Virus record (IMG/VR): IMGVR_UViG_3300043410_001471
Location: 62,001 to 126,000 of that record
Direction: 5' to 3' (one strand)
DNA: 64,000 bases
This document shows positions 51,569 through 64,000 of this stretch, in pieces; the stretch's first letter is position 1, and each line of letters starts with the position of its first letter. A program made the translations under genes and the position numbers. The notes below the pieces were generated by a model that was not told where the DNA came from, searched no databases, and saw only the letters and a list, made by a program, of their open reading frames with translations.

Positions 51569-54500
51569 ATGAATTTAAGCGAAGTAGATAAACCAGAAGT
51601 TAAAAAGACCATAGTAGTATATTCAGGTCGTTTTCAACCATTTCACAAAGGGCATTATGTTTCTTATTTAAAACTTTGTAGTAAGTTTGGTAAGAATAAT
51701 GTCTATATTGGTACATCTAATGATACTTCCGGTCCAAAATCTCCATTTAACTTTAACGAAAAAGTTAAAATAATGAACACTATGTTCGGTATTCCATCGG
51801 ACAAGATAGTTCAGGTGAAAAATCCATATGCTCCAAAAGAAATTTTACAACAATTTGATGGTAAAACAACTCAATACATTGCAGCAGTTGGAGAAAAGGA
51901 TGCAAATAGATTACAAGGTAAATATTTTAAGCCATATAAAGGTAAAGCTGGATATGGTTACGATGAAATTGGTTATGTTTATCCCGTTCCTGCTGAAACT
52001 AACGCAATTAGTGGAACTGATGTTCGAAGTTGGTTAGGTAGTGATAGTAAAGATAAAGAAAAAGGATTTTTAAAAGCATATCCAAAATTTGATAAAGAAA
52101 TTTTTAAAATGATAACAGGTAAATTAAACGAATCGGTAAATACAAATCCATCATATACGATGAGGCCAGAACCACATCCAACTAGACATGAAACGGAACA
52201 CCCAACCGATGAACCTGATTGGCATAAAAAGGATGAACCATATGACCCTATTTCGGAATTAATAGGTAAAACTATGATGGAAGAAATGTTTCAAGACTTT
52301 TTAAGAGAATATTTGGATGAAGAATCCGAAGCTCAGAAAATGGGATTGATACACTTAGGTGGTGGGTATTATGGTAAGGAGCAAGGTAAACCAGCTACTC
52401 ATAAATCGGAAGATGGTAAAATTAGAGCATTAACACCCGCTGAAGTAGCTGCGGAAAAGCAAAAACAAATGGCTAAAGGTCCTTCGGATGCACCTGCAAA
52501 CGAACCTAAACCATCTCAACCAGGTCAACCTGTTAATAAAGGAGCAACTGCTCAAGGTAAAGTTGATAAAGCAAAGGAAGAACCAACTAATAAAAAAGTA
52601 GGTGGAGAACAGCCTGGTCAACAAGCGCCTCCGCCTGAACAAAAGTTAAGTGGAGCAGAATTGAAATCATCTGCCGAAATGTCTCCAGATGAAAAGAAAC
52701 AAGCCGAAGTAAAAGAAAAATTACATCATGCAATGGCTGATTTATCAGATGATGATAAAAAAGTAGTAGATGATGTTAATAACCCGGATTCAGAAATGAG
52801 AAAGGGTTGGTATGAAAAATTAAATGATTGGACTGGAGATAAACTACATAAAGTTGGTAAAGCAGTTGGGCATGTAATTGCACATAAAGTAGACCAATAT
52901 AAAGAATTTGGTAAGGGTATGTACTCATTAGCAACTTCAGGTAAATTGGGTACAATTACAGATGAAGAAACTGGTAAAAAAGTACATTGGTCTGATTATA
53001 CACAGGGAGGTTCATCCAAAGAAGGATGGGGAGATAAAATGAAAGATGTGCCTGTTTATAAAAAAGATAGTCATGGACATCCTATACATGATGAAGAAGG
53101 TAATCCGGTTCAAGATAAAGATTGGAGGGGTAGACCTAAAACACAAAAAGAACCTGTATTTAGAGAAGATTTATCACCAAGAGAATTGGCATTAGCAAAG
53201 AAATCTTGGTATGAAAGAAATGAACAAATAAAAGGTTTAAAAGGAACTGCTATGGATGCCGCTCTTATTGCTGGTAGTATGATGACAGCAGGGGCTGCAA
53301 CTGGGGCATTAGCTGCAAAGGGTATCGGTACTACTGCAAATGTTGCATCGTATGCGGGGCAAACATTGGGACATGCAATTCAACATGGAGCTGTTCACTC
53401 ATTCACATCGGGGGCGAGTTATTTTGGAATTCACTTAGGAAAGGATATGGCTAAACACGTTGCAATTGAAGCAACGGGATTAGGTGCGATGGGAACAACT
53501 ACTGCTGGAACTGTTTTAAGTGTTGCAACGGGTGGTATTTTGGAAGGAATTGGTAATGATTCAAATCAGCCAAATCCACAAGATATGATGATGAACCTAA
53601 TAAAGAAAATAGGTGAAAGAATGCAAACATTTAAAATGAGTGATGAACAAATGTTGGCATCTATTGAATCATATAAAAAAAATAAACCAGAATCCGATTT
53701 AGCAAACGCTGCAAAGGATTTAATGAAAGAAGATTTATCAGATTCTAAAAAAGCAAATATACAACACTTTGTAGAATTTGCAACTAAGAGATTAAAACTA
53801 CAAGAAACTCCAAAAGTAACTTTGGTAGGTGGAAAAGAATATGGTAATGTAAAATCTTCATTAGGTGGATACAGCCCAGAAGATAAAACAATATATGTTG
53901 CAACTGAAGGTAGATTGACAGCAGATATCCTAAGAACTCTTGCGCATGAGATGGTTCATAGAAAGCAAGATGAGATGGGATACATCAAAGATTCGGTACA
54001 AGATGGTGCGGATGGTTCTCCAATAGAAAACCAAGCACATTCAATTGCTGGAATCTTAATGAGAGAATATGGTAGAATCAACAAACAAATTTACAACGAA
54101 GATGTTAATGTAGATGTTGATAAAGGTGATGAAGTTTTAATGGGTAAATTTAAAAACAAAAAAGTTACCGTTAAAGATATTGGAACTGATGACCATGGGA
54201 TGCCAACAATCAATGGTAAGCAAGCAACTACATTCAGAATTCCACGAGGTGAAAGTGTAAACGAAGTTGGTTCAAATGATTGGAGATTCAAAGCAATTAT
54301 GAAATTGTGGGATAAAGCATCTACATTTGGTAGAAAGAAAATTGCAGCAGCAGTTTGTAAAGACCCAAATGCGGATAGAAATGATGTTGCAAGAGAATTG
54401 AGAAGTTTTGGATATAGAGATATAACATCGGTTGGTGACCAATTAGGATTAGACGAAAAAAAAAATCTTAAAGAAAAATTATCACACTCCAATTTAGATA

Positions 54501-56257
54501 GTGTAGAGAAATATGCGGATAGAGAATTATCTCCTGCTGATATTGAATTTAGTAATCATTTCTTTGATAGATTAAATGACCCAAGAAATGGTAAAGAAAT
54601 TTCAGAACCAGAATTAACTGGGTTTTTCAAAAGATTAGCAAGACACAAAAAAGAATTTTTAGATTTTTTAGATAAGTACAATCAAATCGTAGTTAAAGAT
54701 ACGAGAAGTGATATCAATATCCCATTTGTAAAAATGGCAAATAAAGTTATCGCTAAGACTGTAATGAGAAAGGGCGAATTTCAAACATCATCTCATACAA
54801 TCGTAAATGAAGCACAGGCCGTTAGTGGTGGCAAGGTTCATAAATTCATTACTGGTAAAAATTTAGGATTCAAAGGTAAAAAGTATTCTGAAATTGAATT
54901 TGAAACATTAGGAATCGATAATAGAAATCAGACTGTTAGATTGAAAATTATAGCACCAAAAGAAATTGGTGGTAATGAAATGAGTTTAGATTTCAGAACA
55001 ATTAGAAGAGGTCCTTTTTTCAAAACCGATACTCATTCTCACTCAATACATGAAGGATTGATATTAGAAGGTGGTGCATACGGGCACATGTCACATCCAT
55101 TTGATGATATGGATTTAACTTTTGGTGATTTGAAAAAGATTATCAAAGGAGCATTGACGGGTAATTTAGAATTGACAAGAGAGAAAACTGATGGGCAAGC
55201 ATTGGCAATCAGTTGGAAGAATGGTAGATTAATTGCAGCAAGAAATAAATCACATTTAGCTAATGGTGGAGCCGGTGCAATGGGTATCGAAGATGTAGCA
55301 AATAAGTTTGGTGGTAGAGGTGGTTTAACCGATGCATACAATTTCGCAATGAAGGATTTGACAGCAGCAATCCAATCATTATCAGAAGCACAAAGAAAAA
55401 AGATATTTAACGAAGGACAATGTTTTATGAATTTGGAAGTAATATGGCCAACTTCAGTAAATGTTATTCCTTACGGACAGGCTTTATTAGTATTCCACAA
55501 TACAACTTGTTATGATGAAAAGGGTGTAGCAGTTGGAGCAAATCAGGGAGCAGCAACAATGTTAGCAGGAATGATTAAGCAAGTAAACGCTGATGTTCAA
55601 TCAAAGTATACAATACAAGGTCCACCTGTAACAGAACTACCTAAAAATGAGGAGTTAAGTTCGAAGCAAACAAAATACCTAACTCAATTACAAAAGATTC
55701 AATTTCAATTCCAATTATCCGATAAGGATGGTGTTTCTGAATATCATCAAGCATGGTGGGAAGATTTTGTGAACAAAGGTGGAGTTAAATTACAAAAATT
55801 AGAAAAGGAAGCATTAGTAAGAAGATGGGCATTTGGCGATAAATCATTTCGTTTAAACACTATCGCTGATAAAGATGCTCAAAAATGGGCAATCGATAAT
55901 GATAAAGTAAATGTAGCTAAACAACAAAAAGAAAATGTTAGACAATTTGAAGAAATATTTTTGGGGGTTGGTGCAGACGTTCTCTCATTTATGGGTTCAG
56001 TTTTAACAGCAAACCCAGATGCAGCAGTTCGTAATATGAAAGATAGATTAAAATCAACTGCGGAGAAAGTTAGAGGAAGTGGTGACCCATCTAAAATAGC
56101 TAAATTGAAAATGGAATTAAGTAGATTGGCTAGTATTGGTGGTAAAGACAAGATAGTTCCAAACGAAGGTATTGTATTTGTTTATAAAGGAAACACTTAC
56201 AAACTTACAGGTACATTCGCACCATTAAATCAAATTTTAGGTATATTTTACGAATAA
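51569..56257 (+). CDS. Multidomain protein: HxGH nucleotidyltransferase, low-complexity/hydrophobic region, HExxH zincin, small domains, and C-terminal ligase-like KxDG domain (DUF6267-like)
   Basis: GRFQPFHKGH (51644-55); RTLAHEMVH (53945-59); GGAYGHMSHPFD, EKTDG (55181-95), ARNK, NLEVI, EGIVF, YKLTG at the C-terminus. Confidence 0.75.
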   Translation: MNLSEVDKPEVKKTIVVYSGRFQPFHKGHYVSYLKLCSKFGKNNVYIGTSNDTSGPKSPFNFNEKVKIMNTMFGIPSDKIVQVKNPYAPKEILQQFDGKTTQYIAAVGEKDANRLQGKYFKPYKGKAGYGYDEIGYVYPVPAETNAISGTDVRSWLGSDSKDKEKGFLKAYPKFDKEIFKMITGKLNESVNTNPSYTMRPEPHPTRHETEHPTDEPDWHKKDEPYDPISELIGKTMMEEMFQDFLREYLDEESEAQKMGLIHLGGGYYGKEQGKPATHKSEDGKIRALTPAEVAAEKQKQMAKGPSDAPANEPKPSQPGQPVNKGATAQGKVDKAKEEPTNKKVGGEQPGQQAPPPEQKLSGAELKSSAEMSPDEKKQAEVKEKLHHAMADLSDDDKKVVDDVNNPDSEMRKGWYEKLNDWTGDKLHKVGKAVGHVIAHKVDQYKEFGKGMYSLATSGKLGTITDEETGKKVHWSDYTQGGSSKEGWGDKMKDVPVYKKDSHGHPIHDEEGNPVQDKDWRGRPKTQKEPVFREDLSPRELALAKKSWYERNEQIKGLKGTAMDAALIAGSMMTAGAATGALAAKGIGTTANVASYAGQTLGHAIQHGAVHSFTSGASYFGIHLGKDMAKHVAIEATGLGAMGTTTAGTVLSVATGGILEGIGNDSNQPNPQDMMMNLIKKIGERMQTFKMSDEQMLASIESYKKNKPESDLANAAKDLMKEDLSDSKKANIQHFVEFATKRLKLQETPKVTLVGGKEYGNVKSSLGGYSPEDKTIYVATEGRLTADILRTLAHEMVHRKQDEMGYIKDSVQDGADGSPIENQAHSIAGILMREYGRINKQIYNEDVNVDVDKGDEVLMGKFKNKKVTVKDIGTDDHGMPTINGKQATTFRIPRGESVNEVGSNDWRFKAIMKLWDKASTFGRKKIAAAVCKDPNADRNDVARELRSFGYRDITSVGDQLGLDEKKNLKEKLSHSNLDSVEKYADRELSPADIEFSNHFFDRLNDPRNGKEISEPELTGFFKRLARHKKEFLDFLDKYNQIVVKDTRSDINIPFVKMANKVIAKTVMRKGEFQTSSHTIVNEAQAVSGGKVHKFITGKNLGFKGKKYSEIEFETLGIDNRNQTVRLKIIAPKEIGGNEMSLDFRTIRRGPFFKTDTHSHSIHEGLILEGGAYGHMSHPFDDMDLTFGDLKKIIKGALTGNLELTREKTDGQALAISWKNGRLIAARNKSHLANGGAGAMGIEDVANKFGGRGGLTDAYNFAMKDLTAAIQSLSEAQRKKIFNEGQCFMNLEVIWPTSVNVIPYGQALLVFHNTTCYDEKGVAVGANQGAATMLAGMIKQVNADVQSKYTIQGPPVTELPKNEELSSKQTKYLTQLQKIQFQFQLSDKDGVSEYHQAWWEDFVNKGGVKLQKLEKEALVRRWAFGDKSFRLNTIADKDAQKWAIDNDKVNVAKQQKENVRQFEEIFLGVGADVLSFMGSVLTANPDAAVRNMKDRLKSTAEKVRGSGDPSKIAKLKMELSRLASIGGKDKIVPNEGIVFVYKGNTYKLTGTFAPLNQILGIFYE

Positions 56258-57624: not shown

Positions 57625-59235
57625 ATGGCAGTTCAAGGGAAACCAACGAAAAGTCTAAAAGAAATAATTGCTGAAGAATATCGTAAATGTGCGGCTGACC
57701 CCATTTACTTTATGAAGAAGTATTGTGTTATTCAACATCCGGTGAGAGGGAAAATTCCCTTTCACCTTTATCCTTTCCAGGAAGATTGTTTAACGGATTT
57801 TAAAGACCATCGGTTTAACATCATCCTTAAATCTCGTCAATTGGGTTTATCAACTCTTTCGGCAGGATTTATTCTTTGGAAAATGATTTTCAATCAGGAC
57901 TTTAATGCATTGGTTATCGCAACAAAAGTTACGGTAGCAAAAAACCTTGTAGAGAAAGTAAGGGTTATGCACGATTTACTTCCTATATGGTTGAGAGATG
58001 GTGGAACTGCGGCAGCAGAAGATAACAAACTCTCACTTAAATTAAAAAATGGTTCGCAAGTAAAAGCAATCGCATCTTCTCCAGATGCAGGTCGTTCAGA
58101 AGCCTTATCACTATTAGTTGTGGATGAGGCAGCTTTCATTAGAGATATTGATGAGATTTGGTTATCAGCGCAATCTACCTTATCAACGGGTGGTAGTGCT
58201 ATTGTATTATCTACACCAAATGGTATTGGTAACTGGTTTCATAAAATGTGGGTTGAAGGTGAAAGTGGAACAAATGGTTTTAATTGTATAAATCTCCATT
58301 GGACTGTACACCCTGAAAGAAATCAGGCTTGGAGAGATGAACAAACTCGTATCTTAGGAGTTAAGGGAGCAGCACAAGAATGTGATTGTGACTTTATCGG
58401 TTCAGGAGATACTGTATTTGAACCAGCTCTACTGACTTGGTATAAAGATACCTATGTAATGGAGCCGGTTGAGAAAAGAGGATTTGATAACAATCTATGG
58501 GTATGGGAATATCCAAATTATAATAAACAATATATTGTTGTAGCGGACGTTGCCCGTGGAGATGGTTCTGACTACTCTACGGCTCATATTATTGATATAG
58601 AAGATTGTGTTCAAGTTGCAGAATATAGAGGTAAAGTTGATACAAAGGATTTTGGAAACTTTTTAACCTCATTGGCAACTGAATATAATACGGCACTTTT
58701 GATTATTGAAAATGCAAATGTGGGATGGGCTTGTATTCAGCAAGTAATCGATAGAAATTATAGTAATTTATTCTATATGAGTAATGATTTGAAATATATC
58801 GATGTTGAAAGACAAATGTCAAACAAATATTATAGAGATGAAAGACAAATGGTTGCTGGATTCTCTACTACATCTAAAACTCGTCCTTTAATCATATCAG
58901 CATTGGATACTTATATGAATGATAAAGATATCATTATTCGTTCTCAAAGAACAATTGATGAGATGTTTACATTTATCTGGAGTGGAGGTAGAGCTGAAGC
59001 GATGAAAGGGTATAATGATGACTTGATTATGGCATTGGGTATTGGACTTTGGGTTCGTAATACCGCACTTCGTTTAAGACAAGAAGGTATAGACTTAACA
59101 AAAAGTATGTTGAATTCAACTACTATCCAAAATAACACCGGAGTATATGCTACAAACTGGCAGCAAGGTAGAAATCCGTATGAAATGGAGGTAGGAAAAG
59201 GTCAAACCGAAAATTTAACTTGGTTACTTCAATAA
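57625..59235 (+). CDS. terL: Terminase large subunit (T4 gp17-like)
   Basis: CAADPIYF...Y..IQHP, LKSRQLGLST, VVDEAAFI, STPNG, VADVARGDGSDYS, IIENANVG, DDLIMAL. Confidence 0.95.
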   Translation: MAVQGKPTKSLKEIIAEEYRKCAADPIYFMKKYCVIQHPVRGKIPFHLYPFQEDCLTDFKDHRFNIILKSRQLGLSTLSAGFILWKMIFNQDFNALVIATKVTVAKNLVEKVRVMHDLLPIWLRDGGTAAAEDNKLSLKLKNGSQVKAIASSPDAGRSEALSLLVVDEAAFIRDIDEIWLSAQSTLSTGGSAIVLSTPNGIGNWFHKMWVEGESGTNGFNCINLHWTVHPERNQAWRDEQTRILGVKGAAQECDCDFIGSGDTVFEPALLTWYKDTYVMEPVEKRGFDNNLWVWEYPNYNKQYIVVADVARGDGSDYSTAHIIDIEDCVQVAEYRGKVDTKDFGNFLTSLATEYNTALLIIENANVGWACIQQVIDRNYSNLFYMSNDLKYIDVERQMSNKYYRDERQMVAGFSTTSKTRPLIISALDTYMNDKDIIIRSQRTIDEMFTFIWSGGRAEAMKGYNDDLIMALGIGLWVRNTALRLRQEGIDLTKSMLNSTTIQNNTGVYATNWQQGRNPYEMEVGKGQTENLTWLLQ

Positions 59236-59835: not shown

Positions 59836-61578
59836 ATGGCAGATAAATCAATATTCGGTAGGTTACAAAAATTATTTTCAACGAATACTATAATTCGTAA
59901 AACGCAGCAAGGTGTTAAAGTAATTGATACAGATGAGTATCAAAATATGACAACTAATCTTGTAGACCGTTATATGAAATTAAAGATTAGTAATTATGGA
60001 GTTGGTTCATTGGAATCATCTTTGGCATATCAACAAGTTAGAATTGATTTGTTCAGAGATTATGATTCAATGGATATGGACCCGATTTTAGCATCTGCAT
60101 TGGATATTTACGCTGATGAATGTACACCTACAAACGAACATGGTAATGTTTTGAAAATACATCACGAAGATGATAATATCAAACAAATATTAGAAAATTT
60201 ATTCTACGATATTCTTAATGTGGAATTTAATTTATGGCCTTGGACTAGAAATTTAGTTAAATATGGTGATTTCTTTTTACAATTAGAAATTTCACCTGAA
60301 TTGGGTATTATTAATGTAATGCCAATGTCTACTTATGAAATGAGTAGAGTTGAGGGATTTGACCCTGAAAATCCTCAAAGAGTAAAATTTGTATATTCAC
60401 CATATCAGAATCCATATACAACTGGATTACAATCTACAAAAACTGAATATGAAAACTATGAAATTGCACATTTTCGTTTAAATGGTGATGCAAACTTCTT
60501 ACCTTATGGAAAATCTATGATTGAAGGTGGTAGAAGAGTTTGGAAGCAATTACAATTGATGGAAGATGCTATGTTAATTCATAGAGTGATGAGAGCTCCC
60601 GAAAAAAGAATCTTTAAAGTGGATGTGGGTAATATTCCACCAAACGAAGTAGATAACTACATGCAAAAGATTATCAACGCATCGAAGAAAGTTCCATTCG
60701 TTGATGAAAGAACAGGTGAATATAATTTAAAATACAATATTCAAAACTTAATAGAAGATTATTATATGCCAGTTCGTGGTAGCGATAATGGTACTTCTAT
60801 TGATACATTAAAAGGTTTAGAATATAATATGATTGATGACCTTAACTACTTAAAAGGTAAGTTAATGGCAGCATTGAAAATTCCAAAAGCATATTTAGGA
60901 TTTGAAGAAGATACCAATGGTAAAGCAACATTGGCATCGATGGATATCCGTTTCGCAAAGACAATCGAAAGAATTCAAAAAGTATTAATTTCAGAATTAA
61001 CAAAGATAGGAATCATTCACTTATATGCGCAAGGTATAGATGATGATAGATTGACTAACTTTACATTGGAACTTACAATCCCATCTAAAATCTACGAACA
61101 AGAGCAAGTTGAATTATATACTTCTAAAGTAGCATTGATTCAACAAATGCAACAAACAAAGATGTTCTCTAAAGAATGGATGTATGATTCAGTAATGAAG
61201 ATGGCTAAAGATGAGCAAGATGAATTGACATTGCAAGTATTGGAAGATACTAAGCAAATGTTTAGATTGACATCAATTGAAACGCAAGGTGTAGACCCTG
61301 CTAAGGAAACGGGAGTAGAAGGCGGCCCAACCAATGTAGAAGAAGAATTAAATAAATTAAAATTGGAATTGGATGGCGATGTTGGTAGACCAAAAGACCC
61401 GGTTAGATATGGTAAAGATGACCATCCGGAAGGAAGAGACCCGTTGGGAATAAAGACTCTAAAGCAAAGAGAAGGTTCTGTGGCTTATAAACCGAGAAAA
61501 AATTCATATTTGGAGATATTTAAGGATATGAATGGTAATAAAAAGACTATTTTGACAGAAGATTTAACAAAAGAGTAA
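59836..61578 (+). CDS. gp20: Portal protein (T4 gp20-like)
   Basis: YDSMD.DPI...ALDIYADE, MEDAMLIHRV.RAPEKRIFK.DVGNIPP, EDYYMPVRG, IDTL.G, LMAALKIPKAYLG. Confidence 0.95.
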   Translation: MADKSIFGRLQKLFSTNTIIRKTQQGVKVIDTDEYQNMTTNLVDRYMKLKISNYGVGSLESSLAYQQVRIDLFRDYDSMDMDPILASALDIYADECTPTNEHGNVLKIHHEDDNIKQILENLFYDILNVEFNLWPWTRNLVKYGDFFLQLEISPELGIINVMPMSTYEMSRVEGFDPENPQRVKFVYSPYQNPYTTGLQSTKTEYENYEIAHFRLNGDANFLPYGKSMIEGGRRVWKQLQLMEDAMLIHRVMRAPEKRIFKVDVGNIPPNEVDNYMQKIINASKKVPFVDERTGEYNLKYNIQNLIEDYYMPVRGSDNGTSIDTLKGLEYNMIDDLNYLKGKLMAALKIPKAYLGFEEDTNGKATLASMDIRFAKTIERIQKVLISELTKIGIIHLYAQGIDDDRLTNFTLELTIPSKIYEQEQVELYTSKVALIQQMQQTKMFSKEWMYDSVMKMAKDEQDELTLQVLEDTKQMFRLTSIETQGVDPAKETGVEGGPTNVEEELNKLKLELDGDVGRPKDPVRYGKDDHPEGRDPLGIKTLKQREGSVAYKPRKNSYLEIFKDMNGNKKTILTEDLTKE

Positions 61579-62501: not shown

Positions 62502-62747
62502 ATGGTAAATTATAGAGCATTTAATGCAAAATTGGTAACATCTGGTTCTACCGCATTAGTAGATAGAGCATGGGGTGTATTGCCTGTAAGTGGGGTAACT
62601 GGTACAATTACATTGGAAGGGTTTGGAACAGGTAGTACTGTTCATCCAACTATTGCATTGGAACATTTAGTAGCAGGACAACCATTTCCTTGTCACCTTA
62701 GAAATATATCAGTAACCAATGGTGGTTCTGTTTATGTATTAGCTTAA
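62502..62747 (+). CDS. Small beta-rich hypothetical protein (possible head decoration)
   Basis: 81 aa, G/T/V-rich, ending LVAGQPFPCHLRNISVT.GG.VYVL. Confidence 0.5.
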   Translation: MVNYRAFNAKLVTSGSTALVDRAWGVLPVSGVTGTITLEGFGTGSTVHPTIALEHLVAGQPFPCHLRNISVTNGGSVYVLA

Positions 62748-62759
62748 ATCATATAACAA

Positions 62760-63302
62760 ATGCCAGCAGTATCAAAAGCACAACAACGATTTATGGGCAT
62801 GGTTCATGCAGCTGATAAAGGAGAAACTCCTGCATCACCTGAAGTAGCAAAAGTAGCAGCTTCTATGGATGATAAAGATGCTAAAGATTTTGCATCAACA
62901 TCTCATAAAGGATTGCCTGATAAAATCAAAGAATTTATAGTAAGAGAAGCTAGAGGTGTTAAATCAATCCAAAATGATTATATGAAAACAGTTAATGCTA
63001 TTGCACAAACTTTGGAATCATATAAGCAGGCTAAAGGAACTTCAAATGAAAAGAAATTTGTTGAAAGATTGAAACAACTACAAACTTTAAAAAAGAAATT
63101 TGCTAAAGAATTGGATGATAAGGTTAGTGGATTGTATAAAGATGTTGAGTTAAAAGCCGATGTGGATGAAATGAACACAAGTGGTGCAGCTGGAGAATAC
63201 AATACTCCATTTGCATTTGGTAAAAAAGAAGATGAGAAATCCAAAGGTAAAAGACAAGCAGATTTGACTGGATATTCGGTAGTTAAGGAAATTAAAAAAT
63301 AA
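62760..63302 (+). CDS. Head-region protein with DUF3008-like N-terminus
   Basis: MPAVSKAQQRFMG.V.A...FAST.HKGLP.K; C-terminal EMN.S...GEY.TPFAF module. Confidence 0.55.
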   Translation: MPAVSKAQQRFMGMVHAADKGETPASPEVAKVAASMDDKDAKDFASTSHKGLPDKIKEFIVREARGVKSIQNDYMKTVNAIAQTLESYKQAKGTSNEKKFVERLKQLQTLKKKFAKELDDKVSGLYKDVELKADVDEMNTSGAAGEYNTPFAFGKKEDEKSKGKRQADLTGYSVVKEIKK

Positions 63303-63333: not shown

Positions 63334-63648
63334 ATGAAATTACATCAATTAAGAGAATTTGTTAAGCAAGTTGTAAAAGAAGAGCAAGATTATCAGCAAT
63401 TATTCAAACATATGTTGGATAAGACTGGTAAAGATATCAACTCTATGAGTGATGAAGATAAAAAGAAATTCTTCAGTGCCGTAGATACTGCTTACAAAGC
63501 AAAATCGGAGGGTAGATTAAGAGGGTATAACGAAGCTGAATTAACTGCTGGACAAAAGAAAATTGATGTGGATAATGATGGTGAGATTGAAGGTTCGGAT
63601 TTAGCAGCATTGAGAGCCAAAAATGAAGGGGCTCAAAAAAAAAAGTAA
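63334..63648 (+). CDS. Head-region protein with EF-hand/dockerin-like DxDxDG loop; ends on a slippery site
   Basis: QKKIDVDNDGEIEGSDLAAL; ends CAA AAA AAA AAG TAA. Confidence 0.7.
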   Translation: MKLHQLREFVKQVVKEEQDYQQLFKHMLDKTGKDINSMSDEDKKKFFSAVDTAYKAKSEGRLRGYNEAELTAGQKKIDVDNDGEIEGSDLAALRAKNEGAQKKK

Positions 63649-63707
63649 ATGAAAATTTAGCAATTGATATAGTAGCTACATTAGGTACTATTATGGTTGC
63701 TAAAATT
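63639..63707 (+). other. Putative programmed -1 ribosomal frameshift signal
   Basis: A AAA AAG heptamer (63639-45), 7-nt spacer, imperfect hairpin 63653-63707. Confidence 0.6.
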
Positions 63708-64000
63708 ATATTTTATTATTTAGTGGATTTGGCAATTAAAGGAATGAAATATTTCCAAGGAAAGTCGGAACACAAAAAAGAAGTTAAAAAGATTTTAGAT
63801 TATATATCGGATGATACAAAAGTAATATCAGATATAGCTAAAATGGTAGACCCGAAAAAAGGAATTGATAACACAACGGCTGATAAAATTGTAAATTTAC
63901 CAAGAGTAAAAACTCAAATAATAAAAGTGAGTGATTCTACAAATGGTGAATTGAGTGAAACCGAATTAGAAAATGAATTAAAGACAATTATAATTAAGTC
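63645..64000 (+). CDS. -1-frame extension ORF running off the window end (contains a hydrophobic helix)
   Basis: VNENLAIDIVATLGTIMVAKIIFYYLVDLAIKG...; no stop to 64000; frame closed upstream by TGA at 63624. Confidence 0.65.

What the first reader, a model, noticed from the sequence alone, without database searches (positions are those of the whole stretch)
63627..64000. Canonical programmed -1 frameshift cassette extending a head-region protein
Seen: the 104-aa ORF ends ...CAA AAA AAA AAG TAA, so A_AAA_AAG (63639-45) lies immediately before the stop. After a 7-nt spacer comes a long imperfect hairpin: TTTAGCAA 63656-63 with TTGCTAAA 63697-704, ATAGTA 63669-74 with TACTAT 63686-91, and CTA-cat-TAG. 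The -1 frame is open from 63627 to the window end (TGA at 63624), has no ATG/GTG/TTG before a mid-helix ATG at 63693, and begins KKVNE|, another protease-like site. Established: A AAA AAG plus a 3' hairpin is the dnaX/IS-type -1 PRF signal. Inference: two protein forms are made at a set ratio, the long one carrying a hydrophobic helix.
Basis: partly seen in the sequence, partly recalled or inferred. Interest (0 to 1): 0.75.

Follow-up and report, generated by a model that had tools for sequence, protein, structure and literature searches.

The report
Conserved frameshift site in phage head gene
A run of ten A's, a stop codon and an RNA hairpin, conserved in dozens of related freshwater phages, very probably let ribosomes slip back one base so that a small head-module protein is also made as a longer fusion; it is a new example of a well-known trick.

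Summary
The 104-aa ORF ends CAA AAA AAA AAG TAA. The -1 frame is open from 63627 to a stop 61 nt past the window and has no canonical start before ATG 63693. A hairpin of -18.6 kcal/mol follows.

Comparative evidence supports programmed recoding. Of 59 distinct metagenomic relatives whose downstream ORF lacks a start, 58 have the -1 arrangement: an A run of 9-12, then a stop 0-5 nt later. Run length never differs between close relatives. Elsewhere this genome avoids such runs. The hairpin is more stable than synonymous recoding predicts and shows compensatory changes. It is absent where the downstream protein has its own start or is fused in frame. Distant relatives encode the same two parts as one continuous 210-aa protein in the same slot beside the T4-type prohead protease, so the fusion is a real protein.

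A sequencing error is very unlikely: contigs from two other studies cross the run without gaps.

Unresolved:
- Ribosomal -1 slippage (favoured by the hairpin) versus RNA-polymerase slippage on the A run. Both give the same 242-aa product.
- The function of the proteins.
- Whether the conserved [LIVM]-x-E at the junction is a protease site.

This is a new member of a known kind.

The parts
63334..63648 (+). Zero-frame ORF, 104 aa. It comprises a helical N-domain (residues 1-66), an EF-hand-like loop (DVDNDGEIEGSDL) and a Lys tail, and ends AAG TAA.
   Evidence: 227 relatives were found in IMG/VR. The alignment A3 shows the Asp/Gly loop to be invariant. The AF2 model has only moderate confidence, pLDDT 64. 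No Pfam or PHROG family matches.
63635..63644 (+). A10 run, the slippery tract.
   Evidence: The run is 9-12 long in all 61 distinct junctions whose downstream ORF lacks a start. It is one of only two A10 runs in the genome. A conserved KKK elsewhere in the same gene is never all-AAA in 49 distinct sequences.
63639..63645 (+). Heptamer A AAA AAG in zero-frame phase. A second in-phase heptamer, A AAA AAA, lies at 63636-63642.
   Evidence: Every relative has an in-phase heptamer of A's ending in A or G. The shiftiness of A AAA AAG with a single tRNA-Lys(UUU) is described in the review PMC5009743. The phage carries tRNA-Lys(UUU) and no Lys(CUU).
63646..63648 (+). TAA stop of the 104-aa ORF, directly 3' of the heptamer.
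   Evidence: In relatives the stop lies 0-5 nt after the run and is always embedded in the first codons of the -1 frame.
63624..63626 (+). TGA that closes the -1 frame upstream. Entry into the -1 frame must therefore occur between here and the stop.
   Evidence: In many relatives a stop lies only 9 nt before the Val codon, which confines the shift to the A run itself.
63645..64000 (+). -1 frame ORF of 138 codons from GTA 63645. It continues past the window to a stop at window-equivalent 64059-64061. It encodes V-N-E, a hydrophobic helix, then a helical bundle.
   Evidence: The AF2 model has pLDDT 87.6 and is all-helical. The profile search finds 70 relatives, including in-frame fusions.
63645..63653 (+). 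Codons GTA AAT GAA (V-N-E), a candidate cleavage site for the prohead protease. The assignment is inferred.
   Evidence: V1 and E3 are invariant in A2. The motif is [LIVM]-x-E in all in-frame and stand-alone relatives. The protease gene immediately downstream is Pfam Peptidase_S77. T4 gp21 cleaves after L/I-x-E (PMC9026906).
63653..63707 (+). 3' hairpin. Pairs are 63653-54/63706-07, 63656-65/63695-704, 63669-74/63686-91 and 63676-78/63682-84. Weak outer pairs are 63647-51/63709-13.
   Evidence: Synonymous-codon null. Covariation. The hairpin is absent in own-start and in-frame relatives.
63693..63695 (+). First canonical start in the -1 frame. It lies inside the helix and inside the hairpin's 3' side. 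Automatic annotation starts the gene here.
   Evidence: The ESM Atlas holds the protein only from this Met. The first start is at variable positions, 12-183 nt after the run, in relatives.
63626..63631 (+). AAGGGG, a Shine-Dalgarno-like stretch 7 nt 5' of the heptamer. It is not conserved and probably not part of the signal.
   Evidence: Relatives have GAATCGG, GAAGTGG, or GAAGA followed directly by the run.

Best explanation
This is a programmed -1 recoding site in the head-assembly module of a T4-like freshwater phage. The genome is 245 kb and metagenome-assembled.

Most ribosomes translating the 104-aa ORF stop at TAA. A fraction slip back one base on the A run (A AAA AAG, read by tRNA-Lys UUU). 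The adjacent stop codon and a hairpin whose base lies 7-10 nt downstream probably help the slip. Those ribosomes continue in the -1 frame and make a 242-aa fusion.

Shown by comparison:
- the signal is conserved;
- the -1 ORF is coding from the run onward without a start of its own;
- the fusion exists as an ordinary single gene in distant relatives;
- the hairpin is selected only where a shift is needed.

Inferred:
- the slip is mainly ribosomal, though polymerase slippage on the A run may add to it;
- the short and long forms are made at a fixed ratio;
- both forms are prohead-core or internal proteins;
- the T4-type protease encoded next door cuts after the invariant V-N-E and releases the hydrophobic C-terminal protein inside the head.
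For: (1) Of 59 distinct junctions with a resolvable upstream frame, 58 have the downstream ORF in the -1 frame, an A run of 9-12 and a stop 0-5 nt after it. The first canonical start is at variable positions.

(2) Close relatives differ by substitution within the run (A11G versus A10GG; A12G versus A11GG), never by length.

(3) The run is selected. A conserved KKK in the same gene always contains AAG (0 of 49 all-AAA). Genome-wide, 0 of 24 KKK are all-AAA against 10.7 expected. Relatives that lack the downstream gene lack the run.

(4) Hairpin. The median z is -3.07 against a synonymous-codon null in the 61 start-less junctions, versus about -0.2 in 8 own-start or in-frame relatives (Mann-Whitney p = 1.5e-6, not corrected for phylogeny). 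On alignment A4, 81.6% of cells are paired versus 38-55% for slid controls, and compensatory states occur such as AATCTT/AAGATT, AATTT/AAATT, AACTTT/AAAGTT and AACCTT/AAGGTT.

(5) About ten cluster representatives of roughly 210 aa (185-217 aa) join the N-domain, a K-rich linker, [LIVM]-x-E, the hydrophobic helix and the C-domain in frame. Where context was retrieved, they sit between the DUF3008 gene and the Peptidase_S77 protease.

(6) Contigs from two other studies cross the run with 0 gaps.

(7) The phage encodes tRNA-Lys(UUU).
Against: - No RNA or protein data exist. No RNA run holding this stretch could be listed, and only assembled contigs, not raw reads, could be laid.
- A run that is never shorter than 9 is more than a heptamer needs, and it matches the length at which bacterial RNA polymerase slips.
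- Two -1 relatives (L159/L067 and L153/L027) have no stable hairpin. The hairpin is weaker and shows no covariation in the VV-x-E subfamily.
- One contig (L096/L082) has an internal deletion that puts the downstream ORF in the +1 frame.
- The upstream SD-like element of dnaX is not conserved.
- In the likely source sample, the assembler's contigs break at the run.
- The group comparison is not corrected for shared ancestry.
Confidence: 0.62

Rival explanations
1. Transcriptional slippage is the main route. RNA polymerase stutters on the A10 tract and adds one A to a fraction of the mRNAs. These then encode the same 242-aa fusion in a single frame. The ribosome plays no special part.
For: The run is 9-12 in all 61 start-less junctions and never 7-8, although a heptamer would suffice for ribosomal slippage. 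Long A runs are purged elsewhere in the genome, as expected if they are slippery in general. Several in-frame and own-start relatives keep A9-A12 without a hairpin. The +1 exception L096 could be rescued by loss of one A but not by a -1 ribosomal slip. Precedents on A9/T9 runs are reviewed in PMC5009743.
Against: This route does not explain a conserved, covarying hairpin 3' of the run that is present only where a shift is needed. It also does not explain why the stop always sits within 0-5 nt of the run, although the overlap with the Val codon could account for that.
Confidence: 0.27
2. The two ORFs are separate genes. The downstream protein starts at ATG 63693 or at a non-canonical codon, as automatic annotation has it, and no fusion is made.
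For: ATG 63693 exists, and gene callers use such starts. One lineage does express the downstream protein from its own ATG.
Against: The 16 codons before ATG 63693 are conserved as protein, including invariant V and E and half of the hydrophobic helix. The first start codon is at different positions and of different kinds in relatives. ATG 63693 lies inside the helix. In-frame fusions exist.
Confidence: 0.05
3. A homopolymer sequencing or assembly error, or a recent frameshift mutation, has broken a single gene.
For: Distant relatives have one continuous gene. A10 tracts are error-prone. The source sample's contigs break at the run.
Against: The same frame relation is found in 58 distinct sequences from many samples that differ in the bases flanking the run. 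Two other studies' contigs cross the run with no gap. The hairpin co-occurs with the split state.
Confidence: 0.03
4. Phase variation at the DNA level. The A tract changes length during replication, switching the population between split and fused states.
For: Both in-frame (A10, A12) and -1 (A9-A12) states occur in the family.
Against: The two states belong to different, deeply diverged clades. No pair of close relatives differs in run length.
Confidence: 0.03

Closest known systems
E. coli dnaX tau/gamma -1 frameshift cassette (A AAA AAG, upstream SD-like element, 3' stem-loop)
   Same: The heptamer is the same and is read by tRNA-Lys(UUU). A 3' hairpin lies a few nucleotides downstream. Two products share an N-terminus.
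   Different: In dnaX the shift leads to early termination, so the frameshift product is the shorter one; here it extends the protein by 138 aa. The upstream SD-like element is not conserved here. The zero-frame stop is directly adjacent. The A run is 9-12 rather than 6. There is no match to any Rfam frameshift element.
IS3-family (IS911, IS150) orfA-orfB -1 frameshift fusion
   Same: A AAA AAG lies near the end of the upstream ORF, and the shift fuses two ORFs into a transframe protein. The downstream ORF lacks an efficient start. A 3' structure is present.
   Different: The context is a phage head module, not a transposase. The products are unrelated.
Tail assembly chaperone G/GT -1 frameshift of tailed phages
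   Same: It is a conserved -1 shift in a phage structural module that gives a short and a C-terminally extended form at a fixed ratio.
   Different: That site is in the tail module and uses other heptamers (lambda G GGA AAG). The proteins are unrelated. The present site lies between portal and prohead protease.
Capsid-gene frameshifts: T7/T3 gene 10A/10B and Lactobacillus phage A2 major head protein (reviewed in PMC5009743; reference list of PMC10885494)
   Same: A -1 frameshift adds a C-terminal extension to a head protein of a tailed phage.
   Different: Those extend the major capsid protein with a surface domain. Here the carrier is a small helical protein next to the protease, and the extension begins with a putative cleavage site and a hydrophobic helix.
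Retroviral and totiviral Gag-Pol (frameshift fusion to a capsid component, then proteolytic release)
   Same: The proposed logic is the same: a minority fusion carries a cargo into the assembling capsid and is then cut free (PMC5009743).
   Different: The resemblance is in logic only. Packaging and cleavage are inferred here, not shown.
T4 prohead core and internal proteins with capsid-targeting propeptides cut by gp21 after L/I-x-E
   Same: The genes are small and lie beside a Peptidase_S77 protease. An invariant [LIVM]-x-E sits at the start of the C-terminal protein. Stand-alone relatives carry a short N-terminal propeptide before that motif. The module is accessory and often absent, as T4 internal proteins are.
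   Different: There is no sequence or fold similarity to T4 gp67, gp68 or the internal proteins. T4 uses no frameshift here.
Transcriptional slippage sites (Thermus dnaX A9, Shigella mxiE, IS elements)
   Same: The homopolymer has 9 or more bases and yields two products.
   Different: Known stimulatory hairpins for polymerase slippage lie 5' of the run. Here the conserved hairpin is 3'.

Membership tests
-1 programmed ribosomal frameshift cassette (dnaX / IS3 type) | Slippery heptamer X XXY YYZ in the phase of the upstream frame | tested here: met
   A AAA AAG lies at 63639-45 in phase. All 58 -1 relatives have an in-phase heptamer of A's.
-1 programmed ribosomal frameshift cassette (dnaX / IS3 type) | Overlapping -1 ORF that is coding from the shift site and has no conserved start of its own | tested here: met
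   Protein-level conservation begins at the run. V1 and E3 are invariant. The first start codon is variable in position.
-1 programmed ribosomal frameshift cassette (dnaX / IS3 type) | Stimulatory RNA structure 5-9 nt 3' of the heptamer, under selection | tested here: met
   The hairpin is -18.6 kcal/mol, with its base 7-10 nt after the heptamer. It is more stable than the synonymous null in most -1 relatives and not in own-start or in-frame ones. It shows covariation. It is weak or absent in a minority (L159, L153 and part of the VV-x-E group).
-1 programmed ribosomal frameshift cassette (dnaX / IS3 type) | Upstream Shine-Dalgarno-like stimulator (specific to dnaX) | tested here: not met
   AAGGGG at 63626-31 is present here but not conserved. 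This feature is not required for the general class.
-1 programmed ribosomal frameshift cassette (dnaX / IS3 type) | Transframe protein demonstrated, and dependent on the heptamer and structure | not testable with these tools
   No RNA or proteome data exist.
Rfam curated frameshift elements | Match to a covariance model at the gathering score | tested here: not met
   Only chance-level matches were found, with E of 1.4 or more.
Transcriptional slippage site | Homopolymer of about 9 or more A or T | tested here: met
   A10 here and 9-12 in relatives.
Transcriptional slippage site | mRNA population heterogeneous in run length while DNA is not | not testable with these tools
   No RNA run could be listed for the stretch. 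Contigs drop rare variants.
T4-type prohead core / internal protein processed by the prohead protease | Gene in the head module beside a gp21-family protease | tested here: met
   Gene order is portal (Portal_T4), small ORFs, this pair, Peptidase_S77 (E = 2.7e-29), an acidic scaffold-like ORF, then Gp23 major capsid protein.
T4-type prohead core / internal protein processed by the prohead protease | Conserved L/I-x-E cleavage motif at a domain boundary | tested here: inconclusive
   [LIVM]-x-E is invariant directly before the hydrophobic helix in split, fused and stand-alone forms. The motif is short and cleavage has not been shown.
T4-type prohead core / internal protein processed by the prohead protease | Sequence or fold homology to gp67, gp68, IPI-III or Alt | tested here: not met
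   There are no Pfam or PHROG hits. There is no PDB match, and the single BFVD match is an uncharacterised family member.
T4-type prohead core / internal protein processed by the prohead protease | Presence in proheads or virions, and processing | not testable with these tools
   The phage is known only from metagenomes.

The most novel reading that the evidence does not exclude
The site is the control point of a Gag-Pol-like packaging device in a tailed phage. The small N-domain protein is a prohead-core component. The frameshift sets how many copies carry an accessory hydrophobic cargo protein into the head. The prohead protease cuts at the invariant V-N-E placed exactly at the frame junction, freeing the cargo for ejection with the DNA or releasing the prohead from a membrane anchor. 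The family has toggled during evolution between four wirings of the same module: in-frame fusion, -1 frameshift with hairpin, separate gene with its own propeptide, and loss. The A run may act at both the transcription and translation levels.
Probability: 0.3. Interest if true: 0.75.

Novelty: new member of a known kind. Interest (0 to 1): 0.58.

Why it matters
Programmed frameshifts in tailed phages are well documented for tail chaperones and a few major capsid genes, but I found none reported for the prohead-core region of T4-like phages.

This case comes with a natural experiment. The same two-part protein occurs as an in-frame fusion, as a -1 split with a hairpin, as a separate gene, or is missing. 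That makes the roles of the A run and the hairpin directly testable. It also offers a compact system for separating ribosomal from polymerase slippage.

It corrects annotation too. Public gene calls start the downstream protein at internal codons and miss the fusion in a widespread group of freshwater phages. If the cleavage and packaging model holds, it would be a phage analogue of Gag-Pol stoichiometry control.

Tried and rejected
- Family searches. Pfam and PHROG scans of both ORFs gave nothing above threshold. The only hints were sub-threshold EF-hand and dockerin hits on the DVDNDG loop.
- Cultured phages. A tblastn search of both ORFs against 50,697 cultured-phage records gave no real homologue. 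The nearest cultured phages by major capsid protein (Microcystis phage Mel-JY01 and Flavobacterium phage immuto, about 54%) have a different gene in this slot with no similarity.
- Structure. A fold search with the confident C-domain model found no PDB match and only one uncharacterised 204-aa viral protein. The ESM Atlas gave no lead. The N-domain model was too weak to search.
- Rfam. No match.
- RNAalifold. On a MAFFT alignment it kept only the outer pairs, because the helix register shifts by one base between Ala (GCT) and Gly (GGT) lineages. A gapless codon alignment and per-sequence folding were used instead.
- Reads. Only assembler contigs were available, no raw reads and no RNA, so per-read run length and mRNA heterogeneity could not be measured.
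- Upstream SD-like stimulator. Considered and rejected as not conserved.
- Re-initiation after the stop. Rejected, because there is no start codon in the -1 frame near the stop in most relatives.

Full report
**Setting.** The window is bases 62001-126000 of a 245,436-bp virus record with direct terminal repeats, rated complete, with 31.7% G+C. The finding lies in a T4-like head module. In order, the genes are:
- large terminase (57625-59235);
- portal (59836-61578; Pfam Portal_T4, E = 6e-72);
- three small ORFs, including a DUF3008 protein (62760-63302);
- the 104-aa ORF (63334-63648);
- the -1 ORF.

Just beyond the window come a prohead protease (Pfam Peptidase_S77, E = 2.7e-29), small ORFs, an acidic scaffold-like protein and a Gp23-family major capsid protein. 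The nearest cultured phages by capsid protein are only about 54% identical.

**The observation.**
- The zero frame reads CAA AAA AAA AAG TAA, and the A10 run is 63635-63644.
- The heptamer A AAA AAG is in phase.
- TGA at 63624 closes the -1 frame upstream.
- The first ATG/GTG/TTG in the -1 frame is ATG 63693.
- The -1 ORF ends 61 nt beyond the window, so a -1 shift on the run gives a 242-aa protein.
- The hairpin folds at -18.6 kcal/mol, with z = -3.8 against dinucleotide shuffles.

**Is it an error?**
- Assembler contigs from two other studies cross the run without a gap: a 1210-nt contig with 3 mismatches and a 549-nt contig with 17.
- In the probable source sample the contigs break at the run, which says nothing either way.
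- No raw reads and no RNA runs were available.
- The stronger argument is comparative, as follows.

**Relatives.** IMG/VR holds 227 relatives of the 104-aa protein and dozens of the downstream protein. I examined 69 distinct junction sequences.

- **Start-less junctions.** In 61 the downstream ORF has no start of its own. Of the 59 in which the upstream frame could be traced, 58 have the downstream ORF in the -1 frame.
  - The A run is 9 (1 case), 10 (35), 11 (24) or 12 (1). The stop lies 0-5 nt after it.
  - The bases before the run vary (C, T, G). The last sense codon is AAG (most), AGG, AAA or, once, AAT.
  - Close relatives differ by substitution only (A11G versus A10GG; A12G versus A11GG).
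  - In many, a stop in the -1 frame lies 9 nt before the Val codon, so the frame change has to happen inside the run.
  - The first canonical start in the -1 frame lies 12 to 183 nt after the run and is of varying kind. The peptide from the run onward is nevertheless conserved, with V1 and E3 invariant.
- **The exception.** One contig (L096/L082) has an internal deletion that puts the downstream ORF at +1.
- **Own-start lineage.** Here the downstream protein starts independently, through an ATGA overlap and a second ATG directly before an in-frame A10.
- **No downstream gene.** About a quarter of the first 80 loci lack the downstream gene. In these, the 104-aa homologue ends without a long A run and the protease gene follows at once.

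**The run is selected.** AAA makes up 76% of Lys codons in this genome. Even so, none of 24 Lys-Lys-Lys tripeptides in long ORFs is AAA AAA AAA, against 10.7 expected, and runs of 9 or more A's are several-fold depleted. A conserved KKK in the same gene (the DKKKFF motif) always contains at least one AAG in 49 distinct sequences. The junction is therefore a maintained exception in genomes that otherwise purge such runs.

**The hairpin is selected where it is needed.** I tested against a null that keeps the peptide and draws synonymous codons from the genome's usage.
- The 75 nt after the run are more stable than expected in most -1 relatives: median z = -3.07, down to -7.6.
- They are not more stable in the three own-start sequences (z about -1) or the five in-frame fusions (z from -1.5 to +1.4).
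- Mann-Whitney p = 1.5e-6, uncorrected for shared ancestry.
- On a gapless alignment of 39 sequences of the V-N-E-N subfamily, which includes the window, 81.6% of cells pair, versus 38-55% when partners are slid. Both-side changes exceed all 500 shuffles.
- The outer helix takes four complementary forms: AATCTT/AAGATT, AATTT/AAATT, AACTTT/AAAGTT and AACCTT/AAGGTT. These involve synonymous, Leu/Phe and Ile/Val changes.
- Support is weaker in the VV-x-E subfamily, where a GTAGTT/AACTAT stem is conserved but invariant. Two -1 relatives have no stable hairpin.

**The fusion is a real protein.** A profile search of 1.8 billion representatives found 70 relatives. About ten cluster representatives of roughly 210 aa (185-217 aa) join the following in one frame: residues 1-66 of the 104-aa protein, a short K-rich linker, [LIVM]-x-E, the hydrophobic helix and the C-domain.
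- In the four fusion genes whose retrieved contigs include both flanks (five loci: L161/L162, L165, L166, L167), the fusion gene sits between the DUF3008 gene and the Peptidase_S77 gene.
- Three of the six in-frame fusion genes examined keep an in-frame A9-A12 at the linker and three do not. None has the hairpin.
- One contig (L144) has the short architecture but needs a -1 shift at GTA AAA AAA AAG AAT TAA. It has the strongest hairpin of all.
- The window's clade differs by an insert with an invariant EF-hand-like loop before the slip site.

**Mechanism.** The heptamer, the adjacent stop, the 3' hairpin at 7-10 nt and a phage-encoded tRNA-Lys(UUU) fit ribosomal -1 slippage as described for dnaX and IS3 elements (PMC5009743). 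The hairpin's restriction to the shift-dependent wiring is the best evidence for a ribosomal component.

The run never falls below 9, which a heptamer does not require. That length matches the threshold for slippage by bacterial RNA polymerase, so a transcriptional contribution is likely and could even dominate. Both routes give the identical protein, so only RNA data or reporter assays can separate them.

**Function.** This part is inference.
- The C-domain model is confident (pLDDT 87.6) and all-helical, with no known fold relative.
- T4 gp21-family proteases cut after L/I-x-E, and T4 loads accessory internal proteins into the prohead through cleavable N-terminal sequences (PMC9026906).
- The invariant [LIVM]-x-E sits exactly at the frame junction.
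- Stand-alone relatives carry short propeptides before the same motif.
- The module is frequently lost.

Together these suggest an accessory head-internal cargo, delivered here as a minority C-terminal extension of a core protein and released by the protease. Nothing here tests that directly.

**Verdict.** This is a new, well-conserved example of a known recoding mechanism in a gene family and genomic position where I found none reported. Public gene calls start the downstream protein at internal codons and miss it.

Noticed in passing
window 54456-54465: This is the only other A10 run in the genome. It lies in frame inside the 1562-aa ORF 51569-56257 (GAC GAA AAA AAA AAT CTT). Slippage there would truncate the protein. 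I did not check whether the run is conserved.
   Followed up: no
whole genome (G000), including the window: Long A runs are strongly depleted. There are 2 runs of 10 or more against about 12 expected, and 5 of 9 or more against about 31. Lys-Lys-Lys is never encoded AAA AAA AAA in long ORFs (0 of 24; 10.7 expected).
   Followed up: yes
genome 239707-245317 and 55-5158 (outside the window): The genome has 25 tRNA genes, 23 in a cluster at 239707-245317 and two near the other end of the record, including tRNA-Lys(UUU), Arg(UCU) and Leu(UAA). None reads Lys with CUU.
   Followed up: partly
window 63541-63600 (residues 70-90 of the 104-aa ORF): An invariant EF-hand or dockerin-like calcium-binding loop (D-x-D-x-D-G-E-I-E-x-S-D-L) lies in the insert that distinguishes the frameshifting clade. 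The Pfam hits are below threshold.
   Followed up: partly
L096 / L082 (IMGVR_UViG_3300008113_002210), L096:2440-2510: One relative has a deletion inside the EF-hand-like region that puts the downstream ORF in the +1 frame rather than -1, while keeping A11 and the hairpin. It may be a defective genome, a misassembly, or a hint that run-length changes in RNA matter.
   Followed up: partly
L001:3353-3724 (window-equivalent 65353-65724, just past the window): A Dps/ferritin-like gene (DUF5856, phrog_858) lies inside the head module. Relatives carry a Pfam Ferritin gene in the same place, and one also has a ribosomal protein S21 gene (L161:7296-7475). S21 is absent from this genome.
   Followed up: partly
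window 62502-62747: A small Gly/Thr/Val-rich 81-aa ORF is conserved in size (80-82 aa) and position in all relatives. It has no family match.
   Followed up: no
L016, L018-L020, L023, L025, L065, L155-L158: In the own-start lineage the downstream gene begins at an ATGA overlap with the upstream stop. It keeps an in-frame A10 run four codons before V-N-E, and a -1 slip there would terminate after a few codons.
   Followed up: partly
L001:3728-3736 (window-equivalent 65728-65736): An intergenic A9 run directly after the Dps-like gene is followed by a G+C-rich inverted repeat and a T run, which looks like a terminator.
   Followed up: no
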